DNA of 64,000 nucleotides from IMGVR_UViG_3300027759_006101:248001-312000, one strand, 5' to 3'. Shown: positions 1 through 19,900, numbered from the stretch's first letter. Notes: generated by a model not told the origin, from the sequence alone. Made by a program: numbers and translations.

Positions 1-256
1 TATCACTAGTCTCGTTTCCAACTTGTTCTATTCTTTGCGAGAATTGTTGCTTGCTTGTTTGCTTGACATATTTTGAAACTCCCGAGCCAGCAATTAAATT
101 CGTGGTGTTTGTCATAGTCCAATCTGTATATCCTCTGAATCTAAAAGGATTATTAAATGTAAATCCAGTTCCAGGGTACAAAACATTACTAGATGGGTCT
201 AAAATATTATCAAATGTTTCCCAATATGGAACATTGGGGCCGCCTTTTACTCCCAT
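1..256 (-). CDS. LamG/ConA-like family protein, N-terminal part (runs off left edge; not in ORF track)
   Basis: ATG at 256 overlaps the TAA of the upstream gene; manual translation MGVKGGPNVPYWETFDNILDPSSNVLYPGTG... is open to position 1 and matches the family N-terminus MG..xP....LD.S...YPG.G. Confidence 0.7.
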   Translation of the reverse strand, partial: MGVKGGPNVPYWETFDNILDPSSNVLYPGTGFTFNNPFRFRGYTDWTMTNTTNLIAGSGVSKYVKQTSKQQFSQRIEQVGNETSD

Positions 257-3650: not shown

Positions 3651-6600
3651 TTATATCTTTTGCTCAATTTCAAGCGGAGCGTCTTTTCTTGAACCTATTA
3701 CAGTAAAGTCAACTTTGATATGCTTAAGTTTTCTATTCAAGAAATTAGTATTTGCAGCTATTATAAAGGAATTCTTTGATTTCTCTACAATATGTACTCC
3801 ATAGTTTCCGTATGGTGTCAAACTGATTGTAAAGTCATCGTGTACTAATTCAGACCAATATTCAGGTAATTCTATAACAAGATTGCCTCTACCCTCAACG
3901 GTTCCTCTATGATAAACTCCGTGTTCTGGGCCTTCAAGAACACCGTATACAAGTCTGTAACCTTCCTTGGTTGGGTGTTCAATGTCAAAGCTTTTAGTTG
4001 TTGCTCTAAGGTTACCATTTGCATCAACAGAGAATTTTGATGTTGCAGTAGAAGTAATACCTCTAATAAAGAAGTCACTTGTAGAAGAATCATCTCCAGA
4101 GACTGTTTGCAATGTAAGGTATGAATTATTTGTCAAAGCAGCTGAAGCAGAAATCGTAAGACCAGCTCCGCTTCCAAATATGCTACTTACTGTAAGTACG
4201 TCTGTAGATGGTACGTATGAAAGAGCAGCATCAGTAGATACTGCTAATCCTGCACCAGATGTACCTGTTGTCATCAACAAGAAATGAGCACCAGAAGCTG
4301 CTGCAGCATTGACATTAACACTTGTTGAAGTAGTTGCAAATCCTGTTAGATTACCACTAATTGCTCCAGAGAATGAACCTGCAGTTAATACATTAGTAGA
4401 AGGATTATATGTCAAACTAGTATCAGTAGAATGACCCAATCCCGAACCTGATGATGCGTTTACAAATGTGAGAAAGTGAGTTTGGTTAGCATCAGTAACT
4501 GTTACATTTGTACTTGTAGCAGTTGTAGCAAATCCAGTTACATTTCCAGTTACATTACCAGTTACATTACCAGACAATGATGCTGTTACGGTTGTTGCTG
4601 ATATGTTAGTTGAGCTTAATGTATCTGTTGACGGGTTGTAAGTCAATTGAGTGTCAGCTGATACTGCTAAACCTGCTCCGCTGGTACCAGTAGTAAATGT
4701 AACAAAGTGTGCAGCATTAGTTCCCGCAGCATTGACATTTACGCTCAGAGCAGTAGATGCAAAACCAGTTACAGTACCACTAATTGCTCCAGAGAATGTT
4801 CCAGCAGTCAACACATTTGTTGAAGGATTATATGTCAGGTTTGTATCAGCAGATTGACCTAAACCAGCACCTGAAGAAGCATTTACAAATGTGATAAAGT
4901 GAGTTTGGTTAGCATCAGTTACTGTTACATTTGTACTTGTCGCAGTTGTAGCAAATCCTGTCACGTTTCCAGTCACGTTTCCAGTTACGTTTCCAGATAA
5001 AGAGGCAGTAACTGTAGTTGCTGAAATGTTTGTTGAACTTAAAGTATCTGTTGATGGATTGTAAGTCAATTGAGTATCAGCAGATACTGCTAAACCAGCG
5101 CCAGAAGAAGCTGTTACAAAGGTAATGAAGTGTGTGGCATTCAAAGCACCTAAAGCAACATTTGTGCTTGTCGAAGTTGTAGCAAATCCTGTAACATTTC
5201 CTGTTACGTTACCAGTTACATTACCAGATAACGATGCTGTAACTGTAGTAGCAGAAATATTTGTTGAACTCAAGGTATCTGTTGATGGATTGTAAGTCAA
5301 TTGAGTATCAGCAGATACTGCTAAACCTGCACCACTTGAACCTGTGCTGAATGTTACAAAATGTGTAGCATTAGCTGCACCAAGAGCTATATTCACACTA
5401 GTAGCAGTTGTAGCAAAACCAGTTACATTGCCTGTTACATTGCCAGTTAGTGGGCCTGAAAAGAGACCTGCTGTCAAAGTATTGGATGATGGGTTATATG
5501 TTAAGCTGGTATCAGCAGATTGACCTAACCCTGAACCGGATGAAGCATTTACAAATGTGACAAAGTGAGTTTGGTTAGCATCAGTTACTGTTACGTTCGT
5601 ACTATTAGCAGTTTGAGCAAATCCTGTAACATTACCAGTTACATTTCCAACAAGAGTACCAAAGAAATTGGTATAGGTTGCAGCGGTTCCTGCAGCGTTA
5701 CCAGCTAATGTCGCCTCAATAGCAAAGAATACTGCGGTTCCTGCAGTGCCTGAATATATATTTGAACCAGCAGTTGTTGTTGCGTTTGGAATGAATCTGA
5801 ACTTACCATCAGTGTCATTGAATCCAAAGAAACCAGTAGTAGCTGTACCAGCATTAGACCATCTAAACTCAATACCTCTATCTTGGTTATTGTCTAAAGT
5901 TGAGTGAGTTCCACCAACTCCAGAACCAATAACAATAACAGGGTCTACTATTGTTGAAACTGTTGAGTCAACTGTAACTGTCGTACCTTGAACTGTTAAG
6001 TTACCTGTAATAACTAAGTTGTCATTTACATTTGTTTGGCCACCTACAGAGTCCAGAGTTAAGTTTCCTGACGTTGTGTTGATTGTATTTGAAGAACTAC
6101 CGACAATTACACCATTTGCAGTTAATTGTCCAGTGCCTATAGACATTGCATTAGTTGATGGGTTTAGTGTAATTGAGACATCAGTTGATAACGCAGCGCC
6201 AGCACCTGCAGTCGAACTTTGCAAAGCAGAAAACACAAGATAATGTGTTGAATTTTCTGCAGCTGACTGCAATCCTACATTGTTTGCAGTTGAAGCAACG
6301 CCACTAATAGTACCACTAAATGCACCGCTGAAGTTTGTAGCGGAAAGTGTGTCTGTGTTTGGATTGTAGAACAGAGTTGAGTCTGTAGATACTGCAACAC
6401 CAGAGCCAGTTTGTGTTGGTGAGAATAAAACAAAATGACTTGCGGCAGCTGCTCCAGCTGCTACATTGATGCTAGTAGCAGTTGTAGCAAAACCTGTTAC
6501 ATTTCCTGTTACATTTCCTGTAAGAGGGCCAGAGAAAGAACCAGCTGTCAATACATTTGTTGATGGATTATAGGTAAAATCTGTGTCAGTAGATTGTCCT

Positions 6601-8192
6601 AATCCTGATGCTGCAGAAGCATTTACAAATGTAATAAAGTGAGTTTGGTTAGCATTTGTAGCTGAAACGCTTGTACTAGTAGCAGTTGTAGCAAAACCTG
6701 TGACATTTCCTGTTACATTGCCTGTTACATTGCCACTTAATGAAGCTGTTACAGTTGTTGCTGAAATGTTTGTTGAACTTAAAGTATCTGTTGAAGGATT
6801 ATAAGTCAATTGAGTGTCAGCTGATACTGCTAAACCAGCACCAGAAGAAGCTGTTACAAAGGTAATGAAATGTGAAGCATTCAAAGCACCTAAAGCAACG
6901 TTTGTACTGGCAGCAGTTGTAGCAAAACCAGTTACATTACCTGTTACGTTGCCAGACAATGATGCTGTAACTGTTGTTGCTGAGATATTTGTTGAGCTTA
7001 ATGTATCTGTCGATGGGTTGTAAGTCAACTGAGTATCAGCAGATACTGCTAATCCAGAGCCTGAAGTACCTGTTGTGAATGTTACAAAATGTGAAGCATT
7101 TGCAGCACCCGCTGCAACATTTACACTAGTAGCAGTTGTAGCAAAACCAGTGACATTTCCTGTTACGTTACCTACCAGCGAACCAGAGAATGAGCCAGCA
7201 GTTAAGGCATTTGAGTTGGGATTATATGTTAAGTTTGAGTCTGTTGATTGCCCAAGACCTGCGCCAGAAACTGCATTTACAAAAATAATATAATGAGGGT
7301 TGTCAGCATTAGTTGTTGTTACACTTGTACTTGTAGCAGTTGTTGCAAAACCTGTCAAGTTTCCTGTAAATGCAGAAGAAACAGCACCTACTGTTAAGGT
7401 ATTTGTCGAAGGATTGTAAGTAAGGTTTGAGTCTGTTGATGCACCTAAACCTGATCCATTAGTAGCATTTGCGAACAATGGGTAATGAGTAGCATTAGCA
7501 TCAGTAACTGATACAAAAATACTTGCAGCAGTTGTTGCGATGGCAGCAATTGTTGGAATGTCATCCGTATAAGCAATTGTTTTTGCTGTTCCACTACCAA
7601 GGCCAAATCTTAATCTTAATCCTGTAGAATCATAGTACAACGCACCATTATCATTGGTAGCACCAGTACCAACGTTGAAATACATATAATCTGTATCCAT
7701 TCTACCAAGAGTAGGATAAATCCAAATTTTTGCAGTTACACCAGTACCACCGCCATAATTAGGGAAAGGTTTGTATAAAGTTGCTCCATCGTATCCACCA
7801 AATGCTAAAACTGGCTGAGTACCTGTTGTTGCATAATTGTAGATGGTGGATCTTACATTAGTATCTACACCTGTGGAGTCTGGTGTAGTTGGAGCATTCC
7901 AATAAAAGTTTATTTGAGAGACAGAAGTAGCTGCAGCGCCACCGTAACCTGGAATGATTACAATGTCTTTATTACCACCAGCGCCAGGACCACCTCCTGA
8001 CCCAGATGGTTGACCTAAGGCTCTAAAATCTGCAGATTGAACTTTTACAACTTCAGGTTCTTGAACTTTTACAACTTCAGGTTCTTGAACTTTAACAACT
8101 TCAGGTTGTTCTGATATGTCAACTGCTCTATTAGATTTTTTTAAGGATTGTAAGACTTTTTCTGCAAAGTCTTGAGGATTTTGATCTCCCAT
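3651..8192 (-). CDS. long repetitive tail-fibre-like protein (1513 aa) with C-terminal KSF/HP/LEGPE domain
   Basis: 14 copies of a ~65-75-aa GNVTGFATTA...HFxTF...DxxLTYNPST repeat; central DRGIEF...GFFGF module; C-terminal KSFDIEHP..LEGPEHGVYHRG. Confidence 0.8.
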   Translation of the reverse strand: MGDQNPQDFAEKVLQSLKKSNRAVDISEQPEVVKVQEPEVVKVQEPEVVKVQSADFRALGQPSGSGGGPGAGGNKDIVIIPGYGGAAATSVSQINFYWNAPTTPDSTGVDTNVRSTIYNYATTGTQPVLAFGGYDGATLYKPFPNYGGGTGVTAKIWIYPTLGRMDTDYMYFNVGTGATNDNGALYYDSTGLRLRFGLGSGTAKTIAYTDDIPTIAAIATTAASIFVSVTDANATHYPLFANATNGSGLGASTDSNLTYNPSTNTLTVGAVSSAFTGNLTGFATTATSTSVTTTNADNPHYIIFVNAVSGAGLGQSTDSNLTYNPNSNALTAGSFSGSLVGNVTGNVTGFATTATSVNVAAGAANASHFVTFTTGTSGSGLAVSADTQLTYNPSTDTLSSTNISATTVTASLSGNVTGNVTGFATTAASTNVALGALNASHFITFVTASSGAGLAVSADTQLTYNPSTDTLSSTNISATTVTASLSGNVTGNVTGNVTGFATTATSTSVSATNANQTHFITFVNASAASGLGQSTDTDFTYNPSTNVLTAGSFSGPLTGNVTGNVTGFATTATSINVAAGAAAASHFVLFSPTQTGSGVAVSTDSTLFYNPNTDTLSATNFSGAFSGTISGVASTANNVGLQSAAENSTHYLVFSALQSSTAGAGAALSTDVSITLNPSTNAMSIGTGQLTANGVIVGSSSNTINTTSGNLTLDSVGGQTNVNDNLVITGNLTVQGTTVTVDSTVSTIVDPVIVIGSGVGGTHSTLDNNQDRGIEFRWSNAGTATTGFFGFNDTDGKFRFIPNATTTAGSNIYSGTAGTAVFFAIEATLAGNAAGTAATYTNFFGTLVGNVTGNVTGFAQTANSTNVTVTDANQTHFVTFVNASSGSGLGQSADTSLTYNPSSNTLTAGLFSGPLTGNVTGNVTGFATTATSVNIALGAANATHFVTFSTGSSGAGLAVSADTQLTYNPSTDTLSSTNISATTVTASLSGNVTGNVTGNVTGFATTSTSTNVALGALNATHFITFVTASSGAGLAVSADTQLTYNPSTDTLSSTNISATTVTASLSGNVTGNVTGNVTGFATTATSTNVTVTDANQTHFITFVNASSGAGLGQSADTNLTYNPSTNVLTAGTFSGAISGTVTGFASTALSVNVNAAGTNAAHFVTFTTGTSGAGLAVSADTQLTYNPSTDTLSSTNISATTVTASLSGNVTGNVTGNVTGFATTATSTNVTVTDANQTHFLTFVNASSGSGLGHSTDTSLTYNPSTNVLTAGSFSGAISGNLTGFATTSTSVNVNAAAASGAHFLLMTTGTSGAGLAVSTDAALSYVPSTDVLTVSSIFGSGAGLTISASAALTNNSYLTLQTVSGDDSSTSDFFIRGITSTATSKFSVDANGNLRATTKSFDIEHPTKEGYRLVYGVLEGPEHGVYHRGTVEGRGNLVIELPEYWSELVHDDFTISLTPYGNYGVHIVEKSKNSFIIAANTNFLNRKLKHIKVDFTVIGSRKDAPLEIEQKI
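8037..8107. repeat. 24-bp tandem repeat x3 (encodes PEVVKVQE)
   Basis: ttgaacttttacaacttcaggttc twice exactly and a third time with minor changes. Confidence 0.95.
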
Positions 8193-8207: not shown

Positions 8208-8951
8208 TTATTTAGGTTGCTCTACAATTAATTTGATATCCGTTCTCTCTCCGACTACAAAATAATCGAATTCAATATATTGTTTACGTAATAGGTTCCT
8301 TCTTACCCTTTGAACTTTGAATTCAGAATTGTCACTTTTAGAAACAAATAAAGAATCATTTACTCGGGAAGTTATATGAACAGTGATTTCATTTTCAGAT
8401 AATGCTTTAAAATAGTTAGGTAATGCAACAGAAACACTCTCATATCCTGATGCTCTTCCTCTTTGATATATTCCGTGTTCTGGTCCCTCTAAAGATCCGT
8501 GTTCCAGATACTTATTTGGGTCTAAGGGATGTTGGATTTTAAAGCTTTTTGTTTGAGCCTTTATACTTCCGCCAACAATAATAGTAGTTCCAAACTGCTG
8601 CATTACTGAATCTGTGAGTTGTGTTCCCCCGGCATCAAATAATGGAATATATGCTGATGTGCCCGAGCCTGTAATTGATCCTGCAGGTGTAGATGTAAGA
8701 GTAATATCGTTGGCGCCAAAGGAAAATGAAATTCCTGAGCCAGCAATGAGTGTTCTATATACTAAACCTGAAGCGCCACTATTTGAACTTAATAAAGCGT
8801 TTCCAGCAGATATACTTGTTAGGCCTGTACCGCCTGCTGTAATTGCTGTAACATTTTGTGTACGCCAAGCAGTGCCATCATAGCGCCAGGTTTTACCGCT
8901 TTCTGTGTAAACCTGATTAGTGCTTGGACCTGAGGGGAAATTTATCGCCAT
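8208..8951 (-). CDS. short fibre-like protein with C-terminal KSF/HP/LEGPE domain
   Basis: N-terminus NFPSGPSTNQVY..GKTWRYDGTAW shared with 16931-25099; KSFKIQHPLDPNKYLEHGSLEGPEHGIYQRG. Confidence 0.75.
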   Translation of the reverse strand: MAINFPSGPSTNQVYTESGKTWRYDGTAWRTQNVTAITAGGTGLTSISAGNALLSSNSGASGLVYRTLIAGSGISFSFGANDITLTSTPAGSITGSGTSAYIPLFDAGGTQLTDSVMQQFGTTIIVGGSIKAQTKSFKIQHPLDPNKYLEHGSLEGPEHGIYQRGRASGYESVSVALPNYFKALSENEITVHITSRVNDSLFVSKSDNSEFKVQRVRRNLLRKQYIEFDYFVVGERTDIKLIVEQPK

Positions 8952-8985: not shown

Positions 8986-9016
8986 TATTCTGCATCTTTG
9001 TTATAAAATATTTCTT
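8986..9016 (-). promoter_or_regulatory. putative promoter AAGAAATA-N15-GCAGAATA
   Basis: same two boxes with identical spacing at 25133-25163. Confidence 0.5.
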
Positions 9017-9680
9017 ATATTCCATATCTAAATCTTGTAGCATTGAAATTTTGCAATATTTCTTGTTGTGTGAGGGCTCTGTTGTAAATAAGAGCCCCAG
9101 CAATTCTTCCTGTAAAATTATTACCATTGTCATATGAACCAATATTTATGTCTTGGCTTCCGGTAAAAGCTGTGGTATTAGCACTTGTTCCATCTTGAGT
9201 ACCATTTAGATATAGTTTCCAGCCTGATGTGCTGCTGTATGTAACTGCGCAAAAATACCATCTATTCAGTGATAGTGTTGTTGAACCAACTACTGTATTC
9301 CAAACATTATTATGCCCAGCATTTAATTTATTAGATGCAAAAAGCCAAAATGCGTGTTGTGCAGTATTTCCACCACTTATAATATTGTTTGAAGTTGAAA
9401 AATTTGTTACATAAATATATGCTATCTTTGTGTATTCTGTTTTTGAAAGAGTGTTAGCACTAGAATTTACAATGACATAATCATTTGAGCCATCAAAGGA
9501 AATATATGATGAGCTACCAGAACCAACATATGAAGCTCCATTTGTTAGGGTACTAGTGTTTGAACTTCTACTTAAGTCATACCAAGTATTTCCTGATCCA
9601 GAATAACTTCTTAGATTTACTGCATCAAGATATAGCACTAATCCATCTGATACAATGCTTGGGTTATATCCTACTGCCAT
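9015..9680 (-). CDS. LamG/ConA-like protein (array member 7)
   Basis: DGLVLYLDAVNLRSYSGSG, SFDGSNDY, WYFCAVTY, IYNRALTQQEILQNFNA. Confidence 0.85.
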   Translation of the reverse strand: MAVGYNPSIVSDGLVLYLDAVNLRSYSGSGNTWYDLSRSSNTSTLTNGASYVGSGSSSYISFDGSNDYVIVNSSANTLSKTEYTKIAYIYVTNFSTSNNIISGGNTAQHAFWLFASNKLNAGHNNVWNTVVGSTTLSLNRWYFCAVTYSSTSGWKLYLNGTQDGTSANTTAFTGSQDINIGSYDNGNNFTGRIAGALIYNRALTQQEILQNFNATRFRYGI

Positions 9681-10336
9681 TACAATCCAAATCTCTTTCT
9701 TGTAGCGTTATAATTTTGGAGAATTTCTTGTTCTGTTAAAGCTCGGTTGTAGATTTGAGCCAATGCAACAGTGCTATTTGAATACGAACCATATCCTGTG
9801 CCTCCCCAACCTAAAGAAAGCATATTAGTAGTTTCATAAACTATAGGTGTATTGACTGATGAAACACCAATTCCATTTATATAAAGATTATTTGCATTTG
9901 ATATTGAAGTAATTGTAACGTGATACCATTGATTGGTATTTGCTGTATATGCCATAGCGGTAGGATAAGAGCGAATTACTCCGCCAATTGTTCCAATATA
10001 ATTTCCTTGTCTCCAATTCACTCCATCAGTCCAACCAAAACAGACTGCAACATCCCCTGAAGTCAAACTTGCAAATTTAGCCCATACAGATAAAGTTATA
10101 TTTGTACCTTGAATATCATTTCTTCTACCTAATGCTATGTGGTCATTAGTCCCATCAAATATAAAACTGCCATTATTAGAACTTGTAAAACCAACACCAT
10201 TAATGAGTGTTGCACCTGTTCCAGCATATAAATCATAGAATGTTAAACCACTACCAGAATAGCTTCTTCTATTAGCAGCATCAAGATAAAATATTAATCC
10301 ATCAGATATAATGCTTGGAGAATGTGCAAGTCCCAT
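9680..10336 (-). CDS. LamG/ConA-like protein (array member 6); start corrected to MGLAHSP
   Basis: ATG at 10336 lies 1 nt after the upstream TGA and gives the family N-terminus; FIFDGTND, WYHVTIT, IYNRALTEQEILQNYNA. Confidence 0.85.
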   Translation of the reverse strand: MGLAHSPSIISDGLIFYLDAANRRSYSGSGLTFYDLYAGTGATLINGVGFTSSNNGSFIFDGTNDHIALGRRNDIQGTNITLSVWAKFASLTSGDVAVCFGWTDGVNWRQGNYIGTIGGVIRSYPTAMAYTANTNQWYHVTITSISNANNLYINGIGVSSVNTPIVYETTNMLSLGWGGTGYGSYSNSTVALAQIYNRALTEQEILQNYNATRKRFGL

Positions 10337-10337
10337 A

Positions 10338-11000
10338 TCAAATGTTATACCGTTCACGCATAGCATTAAAGTTTTGTTGAATTTCTGTGGCTGATAATGC
10401 TCTGTTAAAAATTTGAACTTGAGATATATTTCCGTTAAAATAAAAACCGCCACCAGAAAATCCAATTAAAAGACCATTACTAGTTAATACATTACTAGAA
10501 ACTGTATTTAAAGTAAAATTTGCAATTCCATCTCTGTAAATATAATGTGTTGTACTGCTTCTTACCGAAACTAAATAATGCCATTCATTATCTGCAAATG
10601 GTAAAAAAATTCCATAGTCACCACTTGTTTCTCTTATACCTCCACCCCAATAAGAAGGAGTTGTAATGCTTCTTCCTAACCAAAACCCATTGATATAATC
10701 AAATTCTATAAGTCTTGCAACAATACCATTTGAAGATGAAGGCTTAAACCATAAAGTGACTGTAAAATCTCCTGATATTGATGTTAGTGAAGGTACATTG
10801 ATATAATCATTAGTACCATCAAAGATAAAACTCCCATTATTTGCACTACTAAATCCAACACCATTTACGAGAGTTCCACCAATTCCACCCACTAAACCAT
10901 TAGAAGTTAAGCCAGATCCAGAGTAACTTCTTAAGTTAGAAGCGTCTAATTGAAAAACTAATCCATCAGATATAGAGTTTGGTCCAGCAGAAATTCCCAT
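10338..11000 (-). CDS. LamG/ConA-like protein (array member 5)
   Basis: DGLVFQLDASNLRSYSGSG, FIFDGTNDY, WHYLVSV, IFNRALSATEIQQNFNA. Confidence 0.85.
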   Translation of the reverse strand: MGISAGPNSISDGLVFQLDASNLRSYSGSGLTSNGLVGGIGGTLVNGVGFSSANNGSFIFDGTNDYINVPSLTSISGDFTVTLWFKPSSSNGIVARLIEFDYINGFWLGRSITTPSYWGGGIRETSGDYGIFLPFADNEWHYLVSVRSSTTHYIYRDGIANFTLNTVSSNVLTSNGLLIGFSGGGFYFNGNISQVQIFNRALSATEIQQNFNAMRERYNI

Positions 11001-11695
11001 TATCTGTATCTTCCTTTTGTGGCATTATAATTTTGCTTTATTTCTTGGGCAGATAAAGCTCTATCAAATAGCTGAACTTGTGATATATTTCCATTAAAAA
11101 TAAATTCATTAGCTTCATCTCTGGCAATTCGAACATTAATAGAATTACTTATGGTTGTGATAGGAGATCCTCCGCCATTCGAAATTGAATAAGAAATTCC
11201 ATCAACAAATAAATCTGTCGCAACTTTATTTGTAATTACTACAGCAACGTGATGCCAGACATTATCATTAATTAATTTACTACAATAATATATAATCCAT
11301 CTACTTCCATCAGTTTGTAATAAAATACTTAATCCTTGTGTAGGAATATCTCCTCGAACAAACATTGCCCAACCAGCTCCACTACCATAGTTTACCAATT
11401 TTGCAACTATCATTTGTACATTAGTGATTGCAGATGTTTTTTGCCAAGCTACTACTGTAAAATTTGTGGGATTATCAAGAAAATTTCCACAATCTACATA
11501 ATCATTTGTCCCATCGAAAATAAAACTTCCATTATTTGATGAAGTAAATCCAACACCATTTACAAGAGTTCCACCTATTCCGCCAACAAGTCCATTAGCT
11601 GTTAGACCTGTTCCTGAATAGCATCTTGGATTAGCTGCATCAAGATACAATACTAATCCATCAGAAACAATTATATTATTATAATCAATGCCCAT
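11000..11695 (-). CDS. LamG/ConA-like protein (array member 4)
   Basis: DGLVLYLDAANPRCYSG, DNVWHHVAVV, FDRALSAQEIKQNYNA. Confidence 0.85.
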   Translation of the reverse strand: MGIDYNNIIVSDGLVLYLDAANPRCYSGTGLTANGLVGGIGGTLVNGVGFTSSNNGSFIFDGTNDYVDCGNFLDNPTNFTVVAWQKTSAITNVQMIVAKLVNYGSGAGWAMFVRGDIPTQGLSILLQTDGSRWIIYYCSKLINDNVWHHVAVVITNKVATDLFVDGISYSISNGGGSPITTISNSINVRIARDEANEFIFNGNISQVQLFDRALSAQEIKQNYNATKGRYR

Positions 11696-12369
11696 TAAAG
11701 TCCATATCTCCTTTTTGTAGCATTATAATTTTGTACTATTTCTGATGCAGTTAAAGCACGATTGTAAATTTTAGCAATACTTATATCACCTTGTAGATAT
11801 TCTGTGGCATAAGTTTTTGCTAGTTGAATTGTAGTTGAAGTTACGTTATGGCTTGTTGGAGTGTCAGAAGCAACAAGAACATTATTAGCATATATTTTTC
11901 TTGTAGTGCCATCAAAAGTAACTCCAGCGTAAAACCATTGATTATTTTGAATATTTCCATTATTGTTAGATGATATTAAATCGTTAGCCCACCAATAATG
12001 AGTCAAATTTCCTAGAGTAGCCGTATATGTTCTAAATGCATTGCTTTGATTGGAAACAGTAAAACCACCAATAGAAATCAAGCCTCTTCCATCTGCCCAA
12101 GAAGAAAGTCTTGCAAATAAGAACATAGAGTAATTATCATTTGCTACAGGAATAGAAGAAGTTCCAGCTCCAGTAAAATAACCTGTTGCGCCTGTTGAAA
12201 AATATCCAGAAGAATTAAAAGATGGGGAATTTGTTAAAGTTAAGTTATTTGCGTTTCTTGACAAATCGTACCAAGTATTGCCTGATCCTGAATAACTTCT
12301 TGGATTTGCTGCATCCCAATATCCCACTAATCCATCAGTGACAATTATAGGAGAATGATCAAGCCCCAT
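11695..12369 (-). CDS. LamG/ConA-like protein (array member 3)
   Basis: DGLVGYWDAANPRSYSGSG, WFYAGVTFDG, IYNRALTASEIVQNYNA. Confidence 0.85.
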   Translation of the reverse strand: MGLDHSPIIVTDGLVGYWDAANPRSYSGSGNTWYDLSRNANNLTLTNSPSFNSSGYFSTGATGYFTGAGTSSIPVANDNYSMFLFARLSSWADGRGLISIGGFTVSNQSNAFRTYTATLGNLTHYWWANDLISSNNNGNIQNNQWFYAGVTFDGTTRKIYANNVLVASDTPTSHNVTSTTIQLAKTYATEYLQGDISIAKIYNRALTASEIVQNYNATKRRYGL

Positions 12370-13025
12370 TATCTATATCTCCCTTTTGTGGCGTGGTAGT
12401 TTTGTAACACTTCTTGGGCTGTTAATGCTCGGTTGTACATATTGAATGAAGAAATTTGACAAGCAGCATATTGAGATGCATTAGCTTCTGCACCACCAAA
12501 CAAATAATCAGTTGGAAAATTGGAAATAGTTATAGTAGTAGTTAAAACTGAAACTCCATTCAAGTAAATAATTGTTCCGTCATTTACTCCTGATTGATAT
12601 GTCATAACTACATTTTTCCAAGTGTTGTCTGCAATATTAATACCAGTAGATCTTGTTTGATTTCCACCCCAATCATAGGCAACTAACACACTATCATTAT
12701 AAAAAAAACCATAAGCACCTTGTCTTGCAATAATGCCTCTAAAGCCTCCACCTGGTGCGCTTGTTTTTGTCCAAGCTGATAATGTGCCTGAAGATTGTTG
12801 CAATGTAGAACTATTACCAAAATTTATATAGTCATTAGTTCCATCAAAAATAAAACTTCCATTATTAGAAGAGGTAAATCCAACTCCATTTACAAGAGTC
12901 CCAACAATACCACCTACTAATCCATTTGCAGTAAAACCAGCTCCTGAATAACTTCTTGTATTTCCAGCATCTAATTGAACAATTAATCCATCAGTAACTT
13001 CGATAGGTCCAATATCAATGCCCAT
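12369..13025 (-). CDS. LamG/ConA-like protein (array member 2)
   Basis: DGLIVQLDAGNTRSYSG, DNTWKNVVMTY, YNRALTAQEVLQNYHA. Confidence 0.85.
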   Translation of the reverse strand: MGIDIGPIEVTDGLIVQLDAGNTRSYSGAGFTANGLVGGIVGTLVNGVGFTSSNNGSFIFDGTNDYINFGNSSTLQQSSGTLSAWTKTSAPGGGFRGIIARQGAYGFFYNDSVLVAYDWGGNQTRSTGINIADNTWKNVVMTYQSGVNDGTIIYLNGVSVLTTTITISNFPTDYLFGGAEANASQYAACQISSFNMYNRALTAQEVLQNYHATKGRYR

Positions 13026-13028
13026 TAT

Positions 13029-13775
13029 TTATAACCCATAGATAGCTTTATAAGTGTTGTAGTTAGTTGCTACTTCGTCAGCTGTCAATCCTCTGTTGTA
13101 TACTTGAAAACTACCTACTCTCATAGCACAATAACTTCCCTCACCCATATTTGTACCGTCTTCAGCACCTAAAGCATAATGTAAATTAAAGCCATTGTTA
13201 AAAGGAGCTTGTCTTGTTAAAGTTGCAGTGCCGATTGATGCCCCATTAATATATGCAGTAAGGGTAGTTCCAGAGTAAGTCCAGCCAAGGTTATACCAAG
13301 TATTGAAAGATTTTGATGAACTTGTCACTCTATTAACTAAATTACCATGCCAAACACTAAAAGATATTAGACCACCACTTGATATTTCAATGTTTGAATC
13401 GTGCCAAGCTGAGTTTACAACAGCTTGGCCTATTTCAGAAACAATAACCCCTTGCTCAGTAGGATAACACCAAATAAAAATTGATTGGGCTGTAGATTTA
13501 TTAGGAGATGTTCCACTTATCTGCGCATTTAAGGATGTTGAAGTCATAACGTATTGATTAGAACCATTTAAGGATATATATCCACCGTCACTGCTGGAAT
13601 AAGTTGGACTATTAGCTAAAGTCGCATTACTATTACCTACATCATCAGTCCATGTTGAGCCAGAAGGAGGTGCTGTTTTCAAGTGACAAATTAACCCAGA
13701 ACCAACAACTGCTACACGAGTTGAAAAGATTCTACTTAAAGGTTTATGTTGACTGGAAAATGTGTTTAATGGCAT
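13029..13775 (-). CDS. LamG/ConA-like protein (array member 1)
   Basis: SGSTWTD, LNGSNQY, NTWYNLGWTYSG, VYNRGLTADEVATNYN. Confidence 0.8.
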   Translation of the reverse strand: MPLNTFSSQHKPLSRIFSTRVAVVGSGLICHLKTAPPSGSTWTDDVGNSNATLANSPTYSSSDGGYISLNGSNQYVMTSTSLNAQISGTSPNKSTAQSIFIWCYPTEQGVIVSEIGQAVVNSAWHDSNIEISSGGLISFSVWHGNLVNRVTSSSKSFNTWYNLGWTYSGTTLTAYINGASIGTATLTRQAPFNNGFNLHYALGAEDGTNMGEGSYCAMRVGSFQVYNRGLTADEVATNYNTYKAIYGL

Positions 13776-13781
13776 TATATT

Positions 13782-16700
13782 TTATCCGTAAGTGGAATAT
13801 TGACCTAAAACTGTCCAAGCAGATCCAGTTCTAATTAAACTGAAACCGACTATATCAACCTTACTTGCCGTTCCAGTTGGGGTAATATTATTTACCCATT
13901 TTATTGTTTGCGCACTACCATCTATTTGAAGTGCTGTTGACATATAAGGAGTGACACCTTGTGCTAATACTAAAGTCACACCAATGGCTCTATCATTTGT
14001 AGTTGGAACATTTGTTATATTTGCTGTAAAGTTATTGGAAATAGAGCTGTGATAAAAAATTGAACCTGTTGACAAATCGTGTGTAACTGTTCCTGTAGCA
14101 GATGTTTTTGTAGTTAATTTTTCTGATGTATATGTAAGAGTTGTTAAGCCAGAGATACTTAAATCTGATCCAATATTTAAAGTTCCACCAATACCAACTC
14201 CACCTGTTACTACTAATGCTCCAGTAGTTGTAGATGAAGAGTTTGTAGTTGAAGTGATAACAACATTACCACTTGAACTCAAGCTAGATACTCCCATACC
14301 TCCATCAGCGCCTACTCTAAATCTAGTAACAGCATTTTTTTGTAAATTTATTAAGTCGCCATTAAAAGCTGATATTGCATTTGCAGCAATAAGTGTTCCA
14401 TCAACACTTCCGTTAAAAGAACCAATTGTTTGTTCAATCAATAATGCAGCAGAAGTAGAAGTAGGTAGTTCTTCACCTGGAAAATTACCTAATCTTAAGC
14501 CATTAGTTGTAGTATTGAAGAATAAACTTCTTGTTCCACCAAACCCACTACCAGATTTATATTGAACACTTCCGTCTAAAGCGCCACCTGAAGAACCTCC
14601 AGAAGTAATCATCGGCACCCAACTCATTACACCAGCAGAAGTGGATTGCAATACTGATGAACCAGTAGCCGGAGATGTTGCTGGTAATGTATATACTGTA
14701 TTACCTGTAGCAGATGAAACAAAAGCTGTGTAATTTGCTCCATTAAATAATTGAAGTCTTCCACCAACAGAAACTGACTGACCAATTCCTACTCCACCAT
14801 ATACCCATAAAGAGCCTGATGTAGTAGACGTAGAGGCAATATTTCCACCAATAGATATTCCAGTGCCGGTAAACTGTAAATTAGCATTTTCGCTAACGGC
14901 ATTAGATGAGGCTGGATAAAAAGCAGCATAGGTCGCAGTTCCACTATTTACTGTGCCTGAACTGGATCCCCCCATAATATTGGTTGCAACGCCATTGCCA
15001 CCAGTAGTGATATCTAAAAAGAAACCTCTTGCAGAACCACCTTGCTCAAAGAATCTAAGTCTATTTTGGAAGATATCAATTGTTACACCGTTAGTAATTG
15101 TGGAGTTGGTAGCTGGCTTGTTAAGGAAAATCTCTCCGCCTTCATCACCAAAACTCTGCATAATGCTTAATTTGGTATTTGCATTTGCAGCAACAAATAA
15201 ATCGCCTTGAACTCCCACTCCTCCGCTTACGACTAATGCGCCTGTAGAAGATGATGTTGAAGATGTCGTAGATGTTACTGCTAATCCAGAAACATGTAAT
15301 ATTTCAGTAGATGGATTAAATGATATTGTTGAATCACTTGAAACAGCAGAGCCAGCAGATAACGATGATGGTGTAAATAAAATTGGATGGAAAACATTTG
15401 CGTTTCCAGCTGTGTTTACTACAATATTTTGCGCTGTATTTCCAGAAGCTGTCATAGGCACCCAGCTCATTACACCAGCAGCGGTAGACTGTAATACTGA
15501 AGATCCTGTTGCTGGACTTGTGGCTGGCAATGTATAGACTGTGTTGCCAGTTGCAGAAGAAACAAATGCAGTGTAGTTTGAGCTATTGAATAATTGTATC
15601 CTTCCACCAACACTTACAGATTGACCAATACCAACTCCGCCTGTTACAACTAAAGAGCCTGTTGAAGCTGTATTTGATGCCGTAGTTGAGGTTATTGCAG
15701 CACCAGAAACGCTCAGTATATCTGAAGATGGATTATATACTAATGTGGTGTTAGAAGATACCGCTAAGCCAGAAGCCGAGCCAAAAGATGGTGTGAATAA
15801 TAATGGGTGATTTGCATTTGTAGATGCTGAAATTACATTTATATTTGTAGCAGTAGTGGCAATTCCTGAAGAAGTTGCATTTCCTACAAATAATGTTGAT
15901 TGAGCTACATATGTTGGAGTGGCACCAGATCCAGCTGAAGTTAAAACATAACCTGAATTTGAATTTGCAGTTAATCTTGCCCAAGTAGAAGAAGTATTTG
16001 CGTAAAGTATATCGCCTACTGTAAATGTAGTTTGGAGACCAGTGCCACCATAAAAGGCTGTAATTGAAGTTCCAGACCAAACACCAGTAGTAATTGTGCC
16101 TAAAGCTGTGAGACTAGAATTTGTTACTCCTGTTCCTAAAGATGAACTAGAAAGAATAGTGGTATTATTTATTTTATATGTATTACCTGATGCTAAATTG
16201 AGAGATTCAGAAGATGACCAACCTGTACCTGTATACCAATTTATAGATTTATCAGTAGCACCACGAAGAGTTATACCGCCACCTTCAGCAGTAACGTCGG
16301 ATGGAGTTACAACAGAACCTAATTCAATATTTTTATCATCAACGGTCAAGGTTACTGAATTTATTGTAGTTGTTGTGCCATTTATTGTCAAATCACCAGC
16401 AACATATAAACTACCGCCAATTCCCACTCCACCAACAATTGTAAGAGCGCCTGAAGATGAATTTGTGGCTGCAGTTGTGTAGCCTATATTTATAGATGTC
16501 CCAGTATTTGTAAAACTTAAAGAACCAGTTATTGCAGTTCCAGCAGTAGGATAGTATGGAATTGAATTGAGTGAACCATCGTAGACAGTTCCAGCTCCGC
16601 CTGCACTTCCCCCAGTAACAGTCATAGGCACCCAACTCAATACACCAGCAGAAGTGGATTGTAATACTGAACTTCCTGTAGCTGGACTAGTTGCTGGTAA

Positions 16701-16928
16701 AGTATAGACTGTATTGCCAGAAGCAGAAGAAACAAAAGCAGTGTAATTTGCTCCATTGAACATCTGCAACCTACCACTTATAGATGCAGACTGACCAATA
16801 CCAATTCCTCCACTTAATACAATAGAACCAGTGGTAGATGAAACTGAATTTGTATTATTGACAACAAAAAGATTATCAGCACTTACTCCAATTCCGCTTG
16901 ATAATATAAAACTTCGCTTTATTGCCAT
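13782..16928 (-). CDS. mosaic tail-fibre-like protein (~1048 aa); start corrected to MAIKRSF
   Basis: GAGGA before ATG at 16928, 2 nt after the upstream stop; repeated GALxVxGGVGIG, three YTLPATSPATGSSVLQST modules, DKNIELG module, globular C-terminal domain. Confidence 0.8.
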   Translation of the reverse strand: MAIKRSFILSSGIGVSADNLFVVNNTNSVSSTTGSIVLSGGIGIGQSASISGRLQMFNGANYTAFVSSASGNTVYTLPATSPATGSSVLQSTSAGVLSWVPMTVTGGSAGGAGTVYDGSLNSIPYYPTAGTAITGSLSFTNTGTSINIGYTTAATNSSSGALTIVGGVGIGGSLYVAGDLTINGTTTTINSVTLTVDDKNIELGSVVTPSDVTAEGGGITLRGATDKSINWYTGTGWSSSESLNLASGNTYKINNTTILSSSSLGTGVTNSSLTALGTITTGVWSGTSITAFYGGTGLQTTFTVGDILYANTSSTWARLTANSNSGYVLTSAGSGATPTYVAQSTLFVGNATSSGIATTATNINVISASTNANHPLLFTPSFGSASGLAVSSNTTLVYNPSSDILSVSGAAITSTTASNTASTGSLVVTGGVGIGQSVSVGGRIQLFNSSNYTAFVSSATGNTVYTLPATSPATGSSVLQSTAAGVMSWVPMTASGNTAQNIVVNTAGNANVFHPILFTPSSLSAGSAVSSDSTISFNPSTEILHVSGLAVTSTTSSTSSSTGALVVSGGVGVQGDLFVAANANTKLSIMQSFGDEGGEIFLNKPATNSTITNGVTIDIFQNRLRFFEQGGSARGFFLDITTGGNGVATNIMGGSSSGTVNSGTATYAAFYPASSNAVSENANLQFTGTGISIGGNIASTSTTSGSLWVYGGVGIGQSVSVGGRLQLFNGANYTAFVSSATGNTVYTLPATSPATGSSVLQSTSAGVMSWVPMITSGGSSGGALDGSVQYKSGSGFGGTRSLFFNTTTNGLRLGNFPGEELPTSTSAALLIEQTIGSFNGSVDGTLIAANAISAFNGDLINLQKNAVTRFRVGADGGMGVSSLSSSGNVVITSTTNSSSTTTGALVVTGGVGIGGTLNIGSDLSISGLTTLTYTSEKLTTKTSATGTVTHDLSTGSIFYHSSISNNFTANITNVPTTNDRAIGVTLVLAQGVTPYMSTALQIDGSAQTIKWVNNITPTGTASKVDIVGFSLIRTGSAWTVLGQYSTYG

Positions 16929-16930
16929 TA

Positions 16931-19900
16931 CTAAATCCTCATAACAGAACAAGCAATTTTATAAGTTGTTACTGCATTTGTTGGTGTTACTAAAAATCTC
17001 ATATTGCCACCAGAAATATCTCCATCAAATGTTGATCCAATTGCACCAGTATTGACCATCGCATATTCAGTCATAAATACTTGGCTATCATCGTGCACCA
17101 TCAAAATTTCTTGTGAATGATAATTTGAGCCAGATGTTACTTGCACAACCATTTTTGCTGTTCTAAATGATGATGCGTCTATTGACAATGCAACTTGATT
17201 TGCAGTGGTGGCAGATGTAACTAACGTAGATGAAATTTGGTCATAAACTCCATTGATACTAAAAGATGATGCATAAACTGTTCCTGCAACACCTACTCCC
17301 CCATCAACAATTAAAGCGCCCGTAGAAGTTGATGTAGAAGGTGTAGTGTTGGTTATATGAATTGGTTGTGATAAATCAATTCCACTACCAAGAGCAATTT
17401 CAACCCATTGAGCCGTATCGACATCATTGTAATAAACAAGCAAACCACCATCTAAAGAATTGAACCAAAGATCAGCATTTTTTGGACTGGCTGGAGGTGT
17501 ATCAGAAACAGTTAATGGAGTAACTGTAGTCCAGCCAACTCCTGAAGGCTTCGAAGAATCTGCGCCAAGTACATAACTATTAATGCCCACTGGAAGTTTT
17601 ATGAATGTACTTCCTGAACCAACTAATAAATCACCCTTTGTGTAAGAGTTATATCCCGTTCCACCATAAAGAGAAGTTATTAATGTTCCAGCCCAACTAC
17701 CAGAAGTAATTACACCATTATTTAAAACTACACCAGAAATACTATCTGCAGTTGATGTTCCAGTAAATAAACTTCCACCAATTCCAACTCCACCAGTAAC
17801 AGTAAATGCTCCGGTAGATGTCGAAGTGGAAACTGTATTTGAAGAAATTACAGTGTCGTTCGTAAAAGTTTTGACACCAGCAAAAGATTGTGCTAATGTT
17901 GAAACAAGACCAGTAGCACCAGTTCCAGCAATCGGAACATTGAAAGTATGTGTTGAACCAGATGAGGATATATTGAATCCTGATCCAGATGTTCCAGTAG
18001 CAAAATATTGAATTGATGATGTGAGAGCATTTATTGTTGTTACACCAGTAGATGCAGCAACGGACCACTTTACACCACCAGGAGCAGTATTGTCTGCTGT
18101 AAGAACAAAATTATTTGTTCCTATTGGCAATTTATATAAAGTTGATCCAGCACCAACTAGTAAATCCCCAACTGTGTATAAATTGTATCCTGTTCCACCA
18201 TAGAATGCAGTTATTGCAGTTGCTGACCAAGTGCCAGTTGTAATTGTTCCTACTGCTGTTAGGGAAGAATTTGTAACTCCAGTTCCTAAAGATGTTGAGG
18301 AAAGAACTTGAGTACCATTAATTCTATAAACATAGCCGGATGAAAGATTAGTATCTCCAGCTACGTGAAGTTTGTAAGATGGATTAGAAAGTCCTATGCC
18401 AACATTTCCAGCAAACTCACCCATTGCAACAGTGCCATCAGCATTAGCACGTAATAAGGGTAGGCCAGATATATCATTTACGGCAAATATCCAACCAGAA
18501 GATAGATTGTTGTTTATTGAGAATAATTGCCCAGAACTACCATCAAAAGAAAGTGAATTGTCAGCAAGTACAGACAATGTTATTGGAGAGTTTGTTGTTC
18601 CAATAAATGCCATAGAAGGAATGACAGTAGTGCCAGCCGAGCCCAATGTTGCTTGGCTGAAATAAAGTCTTCCAATTGCGGAATTTCCAACATTTAAGTC
18701 AGTGGCTGTATATACTGTTCCGCCGATACCTACACCGCCTGTTACAACTAAAGCTCCAGTAGTTGAGCTTGTAGATACAGTTGAACCTGTGACTGCCAAT
18801 CCAGATACAGAAAGAATATCTGTGAATGGATTGTATACAAAAGTATTTTCTGTTGAAACAGCTGCTCCAGAAGCAGTTCCTGATGCTGGAGTAAACAATA
18901 CTCGATGGTTAGTATTTGTGGTAGCTGAAACAACATTTATATTTGTAGCAGTAGTTGCAAATCCAGAAGTTATTGCATATCCAGATTGATGGGCGTATGT
19001 TGCAGTAGTGGCTAAACCAGCAGTTATACCATAACCAGACTGATGAGCGTAAGTGGCTGTTGTGGCTAACCCTGAAGTAATAGCGTACCCTGCTTGATGT
19101 GAGTACGCAGCAGTTGTAGCTAAACCTGCTGTTATTGCATAACCAGATTGATAAGAATAACTTGAAGTGGAAGCAAATCCTACAGACAAAGTAGATGGTG
19201 CTACATATGTTGGAGTAGCACCAGAACCTGCAGAAACTAATACATATCCAGAATTTGAATCTGCAGTTAGTCTTCCCCAAGTGCTTGTAGTGTTAGCGTA
19301 AAGAATATCTCCAACAGTAAATGAAGGAACTAATCCAGTTCCACCATACAATGCTGTAACTGCAGTTGCAGACCAAACTCCAGTGGTAATTGTTCCTACA
19401 GCAGTAAGTGAAGAATTTGTTACACCTGTTCCAAGAGAAGAACTTGAAATAACATTGGTGCCATTTATTTTGAAAGTGTTGCCTGATGCTAAATTAAAAC
19501 TTTCTGAAGATGACCAACCCACCCCAGAATACCAGTTTATAGATTTATCAGTAGCACCACGTAAAGTGATACCTCCACCTTGAGCAGTCAAATCAGATGG
19601 GCTTGCAACAACACCAAGTTCAATATTTTTATCAGCAACTGTTATTGTTGTCGAATTGATTGTAGTAAATGTACCTTGAACATTAAGGTCGCCTTGGACA
19701 TTAAGTGTTCCGCCTACTCCTACTCCACCAGTAACAACTAAAGCGCCAGTAGTATAAGAACCTGAACCTGTGCTATCTGTTATTGAAACAGCATTTGTGA
19801 AAGTTTTGATTCCGGCAAAACTTTGTGCTTGTGTAGACACTAAGCCTGTAGCACCTGTACCAGCAATTGGAATATTTAGTGTATGTGTTGAGCCAGAAGA

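What the first reader, a model, noticed from the sequence alone, without database searches (positions are those of the whole stretch)
9015..13775. Seven tandem LamG lectin-like genes with constant ends, variable cores and mosaic shared segments
Seen: seven 218-248-aa paralogues joined by TAATG overlaps or 1-3-nt gaps, with conserved N-termini (DGLVxxLDAxNxRSYSG in six) and C-termini (YNRALTxxEIxQNYNA) but highly divergent centres. Segments are shared in patchwork: TL[VI]NGVGFxSxNNGSFIFDGTND in four members, RSYSGSGNTWYDLSR in two others, ATKGRYR in members 2 and 4. Four more family members lie at 1-2210 and 56466-57296. Inference: a library of interchangeable glycan-binding tips that dock on a common fibre site through their constant ends and are reshuffled by recombination between conserved flanks, broadening host range without a DGR or invertase.
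Basis: partly seen in the sequence, partly recalled or inferred. Interest (0 to 1): 0.72.

Follow-up and report, generated by a model that had tools for sequence, protein, structure and literature searches.

The report
Swappable lectin-fold gene cassettes beside phage fibres
A 358-kb uncultured freshwater phage carries seven back-to-back genes for small lectin-fold proteins inside its tail-fibre gene cluster, and related phages in lakes and rivers carry the same kinds of genes swapped, deleted and re-ordered by recombination in their conserved ends. This looks like a plug-in system for changing what the phage sticks to.

Summary
Seven minus-strand genes (218-248 aa) lie at 9015-13775, joined by four TAATG overlaps and two gaps of 1 and 3 nt. 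All seven match Pfam Laminin_G_3. Four more family members lie elsewhere in the genome.

Each protein is one complete beta-sandwich (AlphaFold2 pLDDT 87). Residues 1-65 and 193-218 are conserved. Residues 66-187 are hypervariable.

The "patchwork" segments inside this genome are not recent recombination. They are variants of a consensus shared by hundreds of phage contigs. Synonymous sites between paralogues are near saturation, and the longest exact match between any two is 20 nt.

Between related phages, recombination is clear. The array always sits between the same fibre genes, but it holds 3 to 13 cassettes in different orders. One relative carries a 660-nt stretch identical to g5 in a background of about 80% identity. 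Another lacks g4 and has a different core in place of g1's. All seven mapped breakpoints fall in the conserved gene ends. The record holds no reverse transcriptase and no serine invertase.

Virion location, docking on a fibre, glycan binding and host-range effects remain inferred. I rate it a new variant of a known theme, modular adhesin exchange at fibre loci. It is widespread and, as far as I could find, undescribed.

The parts
13029..13775 (-). g7, first LamG cassette (248 aa). It has a divergent N-terminal extension and lacks the RSYSG motif.
   Evidence: ORF. PF13385 E 1.7e-13. Its ATG lies 6 nt after the stop of the upstream fibre gene. An 82% orthologue sits in the same position in L090.
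12369..13025 (-). g6, LamG cassette (218 aa).
   Evidence: PF13385 E 9e-21. AlphaFold2 model pLDDT 86.8, pTM 0.85, a single beta-sandwich plus a C-terminal helix. Orthologues at 61-79% occupy other positions in L090, L096, L097 and L098.
11695..12369 (-). g5, LamG cassette (224 aa). This is the cassette traced through relatives.
   Evidence: PF13385 E 8.7e-12. Orthologues at 62-100% lie in at least 12 metagenome contigs with different neighbours. A 660-nt tract is identical to L090. PHI p<0.001. dN/dS 0.11-0.23.
11000..11695 (-). g4, LamG cassette (231 aa).
   Evidence: PF13385 E 3.8e-22. It is absent from L091, where the g5-like gene ends with g4's 3' end.
10338..11000 (-). g3, LamG cassette (220 aa).
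   Evidence: PF13385 E 1.3e-20. A 97% orthologue lies in L091.
9680..10336 (-). g2, LamG cassette (218 aa; ATG at 10336).
   Evidence: PF13385 E 8e-16. A 97% orthologue lies in L091. Its first 90 nt are 94-97% identical to an L098 gene whose core is unrelated (35% nt identity).
9015..9680 (-). g1, last LamG cassette (221 aa), the most widely conserved type.
   Evidence: PF13385 E 9e-23. Orthologues at 46-64% lie in L009, L002, L003, L004, L090 and L097. At least 120 protein clusters at 62-90% identity exist in metagenomes. In L091 its core is replaced while its first ~45 nt and last ~70 nt are kept.
13782..16928 (-). Fibre-like gene (1048-1056 aa) directly upstream of the array.
   Evidence: phrog_6002 and phrog_697 'virion structural protein'. 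Homologues sit upstream of the array in L009, L090, L097 and L098.
16931..25099 (-). Giant repetitive fibre-like gene (2722 aa). Its stop overlaps the start of the next fibre gene.
   Evidence: ORF. 54-nt periodic repeats. Shares modules with the 1056-aa gene and with fibre ORFs in relatives.
8208..8951 (-). 247-aa short fibre-like gene that closes the array in all relatives.
   Evidence: phrog_17490, and phrog_3449 'tail collar' at residues 1-41. Homologues at 54-94% lie directly after the array in L009, L091, L092, L097, L098 and L104.
3651..8192 (-). 1513-aa repetitive fibre-like gene.
   Evidence: ORF. Tandem repeats of 219-423 nt. It shares its C-terminal ~125-aa domain with the 247-aa and 374-aa genes.
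1..2210 (-). Second tandem set of the family: one gene cut by the window start, a 421-aa gene (256-1521) with a C-terminal LamG, and a 229-aa gene (1521-2210).
   Evidence: Family HMM E 1e-10, 3e-11 and 3e-33. Pfam and PHROG matches.
56466..57296 (+). Lone family member (276 aa).
   Evidence: PF13385 E 9e-14. Family HMM E 1e-38.

Best explanation
The region is a hypervariable cassette array inside the tail-fibre operon of a large freshwater phage. Each gene encodes one complete LamG/ConA-like (lectin-fold) beta-sandwich.

The N-terminal third (about 65 residues) and the last strand plus C-terminal helix (about 25 residues) form a constant scaffold. I infer that this scaffold is also the surface that holds the protein on the fibre apparatus. 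The central ~120 residues form the specificity part.

All seven genes are translationally coupled to each other and to two giant fibre genes. They are therefore probably made together and displayed together as accessory adhesins, not used one at a time.

Diversity does not come from mutation in place. Whole cassette cores are exchanged, deleted, inserted and re-ordered between co-circulating relatives. The mechanism is homologous recombination with crossovers in the conserved 5' (first ~90 nt) and 3' (last ~75 nt) gene ends.

Shown: fold family, array anatomy, conservation pattern, and cassette turnover with its breakpoints. Inferred: virion location, attachment through the constant part, ligand binding, and host-range consequence.
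For: - Family and fold. PF13385 matches in 7 of 7. AlphaFold2 pLDDT 86.8, pTM 0.85, a single sandwich that includes the N-terminal strand 14-19, the last strand 188-197 and helix 203-216. Foldseek TM 0.76 to the trans-sialidase lectin domain. The family profile matches LamG/LNS, NanA lectin domain, arabinanase domain 4 and pentraxin chains in the PDB.
- Conservation. Residues 1-65 and 193-218, loops included, have majority-residue frequency 0.6-0.8. Residues 66-187, strands included, have 0.2-0.4.
- Fibre context. PHROG tail-fibre and virion-structural matches on the flanking genes.
- Fusions. The same domain is fused to the C-terminus of fibre-sized ORFs in S-PM2 p176, annotated 'virion structural protein', and in L074, L012 and L018.
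- Cultured example. Flavobacterium phage immuto has a tail-fibre-like gene followed by two such genes annotated 'structural protein'.
- Operon layout. Overlapping stops and starts, and no terminator-like site on the coding strand inside the array.
- Turnover. Syntenic loci hold 3, 9, 10 and 13 cassettes. 84 domains fall into 44 types at >=55% identity, and 15 types are shared between loci in different orders.
- Breakpoints. L090 has 660 nt with no mismatch from 27 nt inside g5 to 14 nt into g4, within flanks of ~80% identity. L091 shows identical blocks, loss of g4, a g5 core joined to g4's 3' end, and g1's core replaced between its conserved ends. Some pairs have identical cores but ends at 82-91%. 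Others have unrelated cores but 94-97% identical first 90 nt. PHI is 13 sd below permutations.
- Functional genes. dN/dS is 0.11-0.23 within the g5 type.
- Independent samples. Logan contigs from other samples tend to cover single cassettes.
Against: - No direct evidence that any standalone member is in a virion, binds a fibre or binds a glycan.
- The only complex prediction run (g6 with g5) gave no answer.
- Paralogues inside this genome share at most 20 identical nucleotides. Recombination between them in this genome would have poor substrates. The exchange seen is between genomes.
- All relatives are metagenome contigs. Long-range linkage on a contig could be chimeric, although local junctions are supported by k-mer continuity and recur in several samples.
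- Relatives were found by similarity to g5, so the sample is biased towards arrays that contain g5.
Confidence: 0.6

Rival explanations
1. This is an ordinary old paralogue family. The seven genes arose by duplication and diverged. The ends are constant only because the fold needs them, and there is no cassette exchange system.
For: Inside this genome the synonymous sites are close to saturation (0.56-0.59 same codon against 0.44 expected), and no exact match exceeds 20 nt. The 'patchwork' motifs equal the consensus of 77 sequences from unrelated contigs. The N-terminal strand and the last strand are part of the predicted sandwich. In ~400-aa relatives an extra domain is inserted after the first strand, which is kept.
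Against: A 660-nt identical island sits in a background of ~80% identity. L091 shows block mosaics with a deletion and a core replacement. Cassette types are re-ordered among syntenic loci. PHI p<0.001. Conserved loops (residues 20-31, 46-48, 62-65, 198-202) are more constrained than the central strands, which fold alone does not explain.
Confidence: 0.12
2. The proteins are fibre assembly factors or structural connectors, comparable to the tail-fibre chaperones encoded just downstream of fibre genes in other phages. They are not receptor-binding adhesins.
For: Their position is directly downstream of fibre genes and translationally coupled to them. The constant part could recognise a fibre. 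No ligand has been shown.
Against: There are seven to thirteen different copies per locus, and they turn over faster than the fibre genes beside them, which fits exposure to host variation better than a housekeeping assembly role. The domain forms the C-terminal end of fibre-sized proteins annotated as virion structural in S-PM2. The fold family is one of lectin and ligand-binding domains.
Confidence: 0.15
3. The proteins are not part of the particle. They might be secreted or cell-surface-directed proteins made during infection, or glycan-degrading enzymes of the ConA-like glucanase type.
For: The ConA-like superfamily includes glucanases. No virion evidence exists for the standalone forms.
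Against: Pfam places them in Laminin_G_3, not in a glycoside hydrolase family, and the nearly invariant residues show no catalytic acid pair motif. The genes lie inside a fibre operon. Fused forms lie at fibre C-termini.
Confidence: 0.05
4. The apparent cassette shuffling is an artefact of metagenome assembly across repeated conserved ends.
For: All relatives are short-read assemblies. Logan contigs break at cassette ends, and the short-sided joints in run X9 are unreliable.
Against: Exact matches between paralogue ends are at most 20 nt, shorter than usual assembly k-mers. Different arrangements recur in independent samples and assemblies (L090, L091-L093 and L096, L094 and L095, L097, L098, L009). 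g5 orthologues at graded identity (62-100%) each sit in a different context, which chimerism between two strains cannot produce.
Confidence: 0.03

Closest known systems
T2/T6-type gp38 adhesin of T-even phages (Trojet et al. 2011, PMC3157838)
   Same: Both are small separate proteins encoded next to a tail-fibre gene. Both have a constant part and hypervariable specificity parts set in conserved motifs. The authors discuss the specificity parts as easily interchanged determinants of host range. It is the closest match in proposed mode of action.
   Different: The fold and sequence are unrelated: no Pfam family other than LamG-type ones matched. gp38 is a single gene per phage, against 7-13 tandem genes here. 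Here whole cores are swapped between two conserved ends, not short loops. gp38's attachment to the fibre tip is demonstrated; here attachment is inferred.
Laminin_G_3 / ConA-like lectin domains on jumbo-phage tail fibres (Iyer et al. 2021, PMC7824862)
   Same: Same domain family and the same association with fibres and virion components of large phages.
   Different: That survey notes the presence of the domain. It does not describe standalone single-domain genes in translationally coupled arrays, the constant-end and variable-core design, or cassette exchange between related genomes.
S-PM2 p176 and related cyanophage virion structural proteins (PHROG 8510)
   Same: Homologous domain, 34-36% identity over the full ~215 residues including the N-terminal motif. 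Located in a fibre-like structural gene cluster.
   Different: There the domain is covalently fused, twice, to the C-terminus of a 1058-aa protein. Here it is split off as separate genes and multiplied.
Multi-receptor-binding-protein phages with tandem tailspike genes (CBA120-type, Klebsiella jumbo phages; recalled from my own knowledge, not tested here)
   Same: Several different binding proteins are encoded side by side and presumably displayed together to widen the range of surfaces recognised.
   Different: Those are large trimeric beta-helix enzymes with a conserved N-terminal anchor only. Here the proteins are small lectin-fold units with both ends conserved.
Diversity-generating retroelements and invertible fibre segments (Mu Gin, P1 Cin)
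   Same: The biological goal is the same: varying a fibre-associated binding protein.
   Different: The record has no reverse transcriptase and no serine invertase. The array has no near-identical template/variable repeat pair and no flanking inverted repeats.

Membership tests
Pfam PF13385 Laminin_G_3 (ConA-like lectin/glucanase superfamily) | Profile match above the curated gathering score | tested here: met
   All seven score 45.9-81.5 bits against a cut-off of 27.6. Ten places in the genome are over the cut-off.
Pfam PF13385 Laminin_G_3 (ConA-like lectin/glucanase superfamily) | Two-sheet beta-sandwich (jelly-roll) fold | tested here: met
   AlphaFold2 model of g6 has pLDDT 86.8 and 16 strands. 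Foldseek TM 0.71-0.77 to lectin-like jelly-roll domains in the PDB. TM 0.81-0.89 to viral ConA-like proteins.
Pfam PF13385 Laminin_G_3 (ConA-like lectin/glucanase superfamily) | Binding of a carbohydrate or other ligand | not testable with these tools
   There is only fold and profile likeness to carbohydrate-binding domains such as the NanA lectin domain and arabinanase domain 4.
Phage standalone LamG cassette family defined here (consensus in alignment A2) | Full-length ~215-250-aa protein with the N-terminal GLV..LDA...SY.G motif and the C-terminal YNRAL...E..QNYNA motif | tested here: met
   Six of seven carry both motifs; g7 lacks part of the N-terminal one. The same consensus appears in 77 sequences from dozens of viral contigs. 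At least 425 relatives lie in viral contigs.
Phage standalone LamG cassette family defined here (consensus in alignment A2) | Tandem, overlapping genes next to fibre genes | tested here: met
   Arrays of 2-13 genes in most of 80 viral loci. Fibre-like neighbours.
T-even gp38 adhesin | Sequence homology to gp38 | tested here: not met
   The Pfam scan at E<=0.01 returned only Laminin_G_3, Sialidase N-terminal and TS_C families.
T-even gp38 adhesin | Non-covalent attachment to the fibre tip through a constant domain | not testable with these tools
   The only complex prediction (g6 with g5) gave no answer. No fibre fragment was tested.
Diversity-generating retroelement target | Reverse transcriptase in the genome | tested here: not met
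   No RVT_1 match in the 358-kb record, estimated 89% complete.
Diversity-generating retroelement target | Template/variable repeat pair of ~100 nt differing mainly at adenines | tested here: not met
   The longest exact match between paralogues is 20 nt. Direct repeats in the array are 60-79% alike and correspond to the gene ends.
Invertible fibre segment (Gin/Cin type) | Serine invertase and flanking inverted repeats | tested here: not met
   No Resolvase-family match. Only three weak 24-25-nt inverted pairs were found, and none flanks a cassette.
Virion structural protein | Detected in purified particles | not testable with these tools
   There are only annotations of homologues: S-PM2p176 'virion structural protein' and immuto gp050/gp051 'structural protein'. 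I could not check what these annotations rest on.

The most novel reading that the evidence does not exclude
The array is a self-contained plug-in adhesin system. The two constant ends of every cassette would serve three purposes at once: they hold the protein on repeated docking sites of the giant repetitive fibres, they provide the homology arms for exchanging cores between phages without any dedicated recombinase, and at the 3' end they carry the purine-rich ribosome-binding stretch for the next gene. Any imported core would then be expressed and mounted immediately. Each particle would display 7-13 different lectins, and lake populations would share a common pool of dozens of cassette types.
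Probability: 0.25. Interest if true: 0.8.

Novelty: new variant of a known kind. Interest (0 to 1): 0.6.

Why it matters
Host recognition by uncultured freshwater and marine phages is largely a black box. This family is common: at least 425 loci in viral contigs, and hundreds of protein clusters that are all labelled hypothetical. It sits in fibre loci of very different phages, including a cyanophage, a Flavobacterium phage and large uncultured phages.

If these cassettes are adhesins, their types could serve as markers of host or receptor specificity in metagenomes. Their clean two-ended design would explain how large phages re-tool their binding repertoire without a diversity-generating retroelement or an invertase. 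The design also suggests natural junction points for studying specificity swaps in laboratory phage-host pairs.

Tried and rejected
- Megablast of the array against cultured phages found no match.
- A search of viral contigs with the 247-aa flanking gene found only short N-terminal matches and no close relatives.
- The complex prediction of g6 with g5 gave 'no answer'. I do not use it as evidence either way.
- The joints reported by read laying in run X9 lie at homologous positions of different cassettes. They have short sides and were laid at 85% likeness, so I do not count them as evidence for recombination.
- A topoisomerase search did not identify a cultured relative or a host.
- Literature searches for LamG arrays in phages found only a general note that Laminin G3 domains occur on jumbo-phage fibres. 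I could not confirm from the papers held that S-PM2 p176 itself was detected by mass spectrometry.
- I considered an enzymatic (glucanase) role and rejected it for lack of any hydrolase family match or catalytic motif.
- I considered recent gene conversion among the seven paralogues and rejected it on the codon evidence.
I obtained only conservation per secondary-structure element.

Full report
**What is there**

The window is bases 248001-312000 of a 358,269-bp IMG/VR virus record, estimated 89% complete. It comes from freshwater metagenomes.

Between 9015 and 13775 the minus strand carries seven ORFs of 218-248 aa. I call them g7 to g1 in transcription order. Four junctions are TAATG stop/start overlaps, one is a 1-nt gap and one a 3-nt gap. 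The 261-aa TTG-started version of g2 listed mechanically is an over-extension; the real start is the ATG at 10336.

All seven match Pfam Laminin_G_3 above the curated cut-off. A family profile finds 11 members in the genome:
- the seven in the array;
- a second tandem trio that reaches from just outside the window to 2210;
- a lone gene at 56466-57296.

**Surroundings**

The array lies inside a block of very large, repetitive, fibre-like genes on the same strand. In transcription order these are:
- a 2722-aa gene whose stop overlaps the start of a 1048-aa gene;
- that 1048-aa gene, which ends 6 nt before g7;
- the seven cassettes;
- after a 63-nt gap, a 247-aa gene and then a 1513-aa gene.

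PHROG matches for these neighbours are 'virion structural protein', 'tail fiber protein' and 'tail collar protein'. They contain tandem repeats. No terminator-like site lies on the coding strand inside the array. I infer a single late operon in which the cassettes are made together with the fibres.

**What the proteins are**

An AlphaFold2 model of g6, built on a 77-sequence alignment, has pLDDT 86.8 and pTM 0.85. It is one beta-sandwich followed by a C-terminal helix. The conserved N-terminal strand (residues 14-19) and the conserved last strand (188-197) both belong to the sandwich.

The nearest solved folds are:
- the lectin-like domain of trypanosomal trans-sialidase (TM 0.76);
- the jelly-roll half of clostridial neurotoxin binding domains;
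- arabinanase domain 4.

This is a fold resemblance only. A family profile matches LamG/LNS, the NanA lectin domain and pentraxin chains by sequence. The nearest viral models are standalone ~225-aa ConA-like proteins of uncultured tailed phages and the C-terminal ends of long cyanophage proteins.

**The constant ends are a family signature**

The segments shared by two or four of the seven genes are therefore differently retained versions of one old consensus.

At the DNA level, identical amino acids in the conserved parts use the same codon in 56-59% of cases, against 44% expected from codon usage. The longest exact match between any two paralogues is 20 nt. So there has been no recent gene conversion among the seven copies in this genome.

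Conservation along the model is striking:
- residues 1-65 and 193-218, loops included, have a majority-residue frequency of 0.6-0.8;
- residues 66-187, beta-strands included, have 0.2-0.4.

Loops more conserved than core strands suggest a functional constraint on the constant part beyond folding. I read this as an interaction surface, but I could not test that.

**How common the design is**

The seven-gene alignment finds at least 425 relatives in viral contigs. In the 80 loci fetched, tandem overlapping arrays of 2-13 such genes are the rule. The same domain also occurs in three other forms:
- two or three times within one polypeptide;
- at the C-terminus of fibre-sized proteins, including S-PM2 p176, annotated 'virion structural protein';
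- with a 200-270-aa insert after the first strand.

In the cultured Flavobacterium phage immuto, a tail-fibre-like gene is followed by two such genes annotated 'structural protein'. These fusions are the main, indirect, argument that the standalone proteins physically belong to fibres.

**The array is not fixed**

A 316-kb viral contig (L009) is syntenic. It has the same flanking fibre genes at 45-67% identity, but nine ORFs (ten domains) between them. Only g1 has a clear orthologue there (61%), and it sits at a different position.

Searching metagenomes with g5 gave a graded series of relatives. Their cassette maps are:

| Locus | Cassettes in transcription order (identity to the window) |
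|---|---|
| Window and L089 | g7 g6 g5 g4 g3 g2 g1 |
| L090 | g7 (82%), g1-like (64%), g5 (100%), g6-like (76%), new |
| L091 | g5 (95%), g3 (97%), g2 (97%), new, then the 247-aa gene (94%) |
| L092 | new, g5 (94%), new |
| L097 | nine cassettes, ending g6 (61%), another type, g1 (64%), g5 (68%) |
| L098 | thirteen cassettes, with g5 (79%) before g6 (79%) |

Across 17 loci, 84 domains fall into 44 types at >=55% identity. Fifteen types are shared between loci, in different orders.

**Breakpoints**

L090 and the window are identical over 660 nt, from 27 nt inside g5 to 14 nt into the next gene. The sequence on both sides differs at about one base in five.

L091 and the window form a block mosaic:
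- the g5 core is identical for about 520 nt, while its first ~80 and last ~70 nt differ;
- g4 is missing;
- g3 and g2 are nearly identical for about 1,200 nt;
- g1 keeps its first ~45 nt and last ~70 nt but has an unrelated core;
- the next ~550 nt, running into the 247-aa gene, are identical again.

The g5-like gene of L091 ends with g4's 3' end. This is the product expected from an unequal crossover in the conserved C-terminal motif. All seven cassette breakpoints lie within the first 90 or last 75 nt of a gene, which together make up about a quarter of its length.

Further support:
- some pairs have nearly identical cores but ends at 82-91%, and others have unrelated cores but a 94-97% identical first 90 nt;
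- a PHI test on 12 g5 orthologues gives 0.476 against a permutation mean of 0.551 (sd 0.006), none of 1000 permutations being as low;
- within the g5 type, dN/dS is 0.11-0.23, rising to 0.22-0.46 in residues 69-125, so these are functional genes under purifying selection and variation comes mainly from exchange of types;
- Logan contigs from other freshwater and river samples carry pieces 95-99% identical to g1, g2, g4, g5, g6 and g7, and they tend to end at cassette boundaries.

**What is excluded**

The record has no reverse transcriptase and no serine invertase. The array has no template-like repeat and no flanking inverted repeats.

**What stays open**

No tool here could show that the proteins are in particles, that they bind a fibre, or what they bind. 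The one complex prediction (g6 with g5) returned no answer.

The closest known mode of action is the separate gp38 adhesin of T2/T6-type phages. It has an attachment domain and interchangeable specificity segments between conserved motifs. The fold, the copy number and the unit of exchange all differ. A survey of jumbo phages already noted Laminin G3 lectin domains on fibres. I found no description of the cassette arrays or of their exchange.

**Verdict**

The functional half, glycan-binding tips docking on a common site and widening host range, is plausible and untested.

Noticed in passing
window 11695-11720, 12369-12395, 11000-11025: The conserved C-terminal codons (..K-G/R-R-Y..) are purine-rich (AAAGGAAGA, GGGAGATA, AAAGGAGA) and lie about 8-17 nt before the next gene's ATG, like a ribosome-binding site. 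Part of the 3'-end conservation may therefore be at the nucleotide level, for translational coupling. Seen in the junction sequences.
   Followed up: partly
window 2212-3336, 3651-8192, 8208-8951: Three fibre-like genes of 374, 1513 and 247 aa share a C-terminal ~125-aa domain (phrog_17490 and phrog_28536; 35-39% identity). It has no Pfam or PDB sequence match. This may be a common distal or assembly domain of unknown fold.
   Followed up: partly
window 8540-8208 and 8192-7700 against L091: Mosaic block structure continues beyond the cassettes. The 247-aa gene is identical to L091 for its first ~410 nt and then 10-16% different. The 1513-aa gene is identical for ~60 nt and then about 50% different. 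The whole fibre locus is a recombination hot region.
   Followed up: partly
L009:6898-7605 and L097:8632-9339: One cassette type is 96-98% identical in DNA between two contigs whose flanking genes are much more diverged. This is a second case of recent cassette transfer that does not involve the window.
   Followed up: no
window 16931-25099: The 2722-aa ORF has several blocks of 54-nt (18-aa) tandem repeats, and it shares modules at 55-56% identity with the 1056-aa gene downstream. Repeated units of this kind could be repeated docking sites, but nothing tests that.
   Followed up: no
L027:3626-5140, L056:5407-6573, L044:11370-12623, L075:8599-9753; window 256-1521: These are ~385-505-aa family members. 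The first 25-55 residues match the start of the LamG profile, and the rest of the domain follows after a 150-270-aa insert. An extra domain is nested after the first strand.
   Followed up: no
window 56466-57296 (+): A lone family member (276 aa, with a 58-residue N-terminal extension) sits next to topoisomerase II genes, far from any fibre gene.
   Followed up: no
window 42952-44319, 44333-50161, 51365-56003: A PhoH-like gene, an unexplained 1942-aa ORF and a split topoisomerase II lie downstream. The topoisomerase has no cultured phage relative above 49% identity.
   Followed up: no
window 8037-8108: Three copies of a 24-nt tandem repeat lie near the 5' end of the 1513-aa gene. They encode the repeated EPEVVKVQ peptide.
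   Followed up: no
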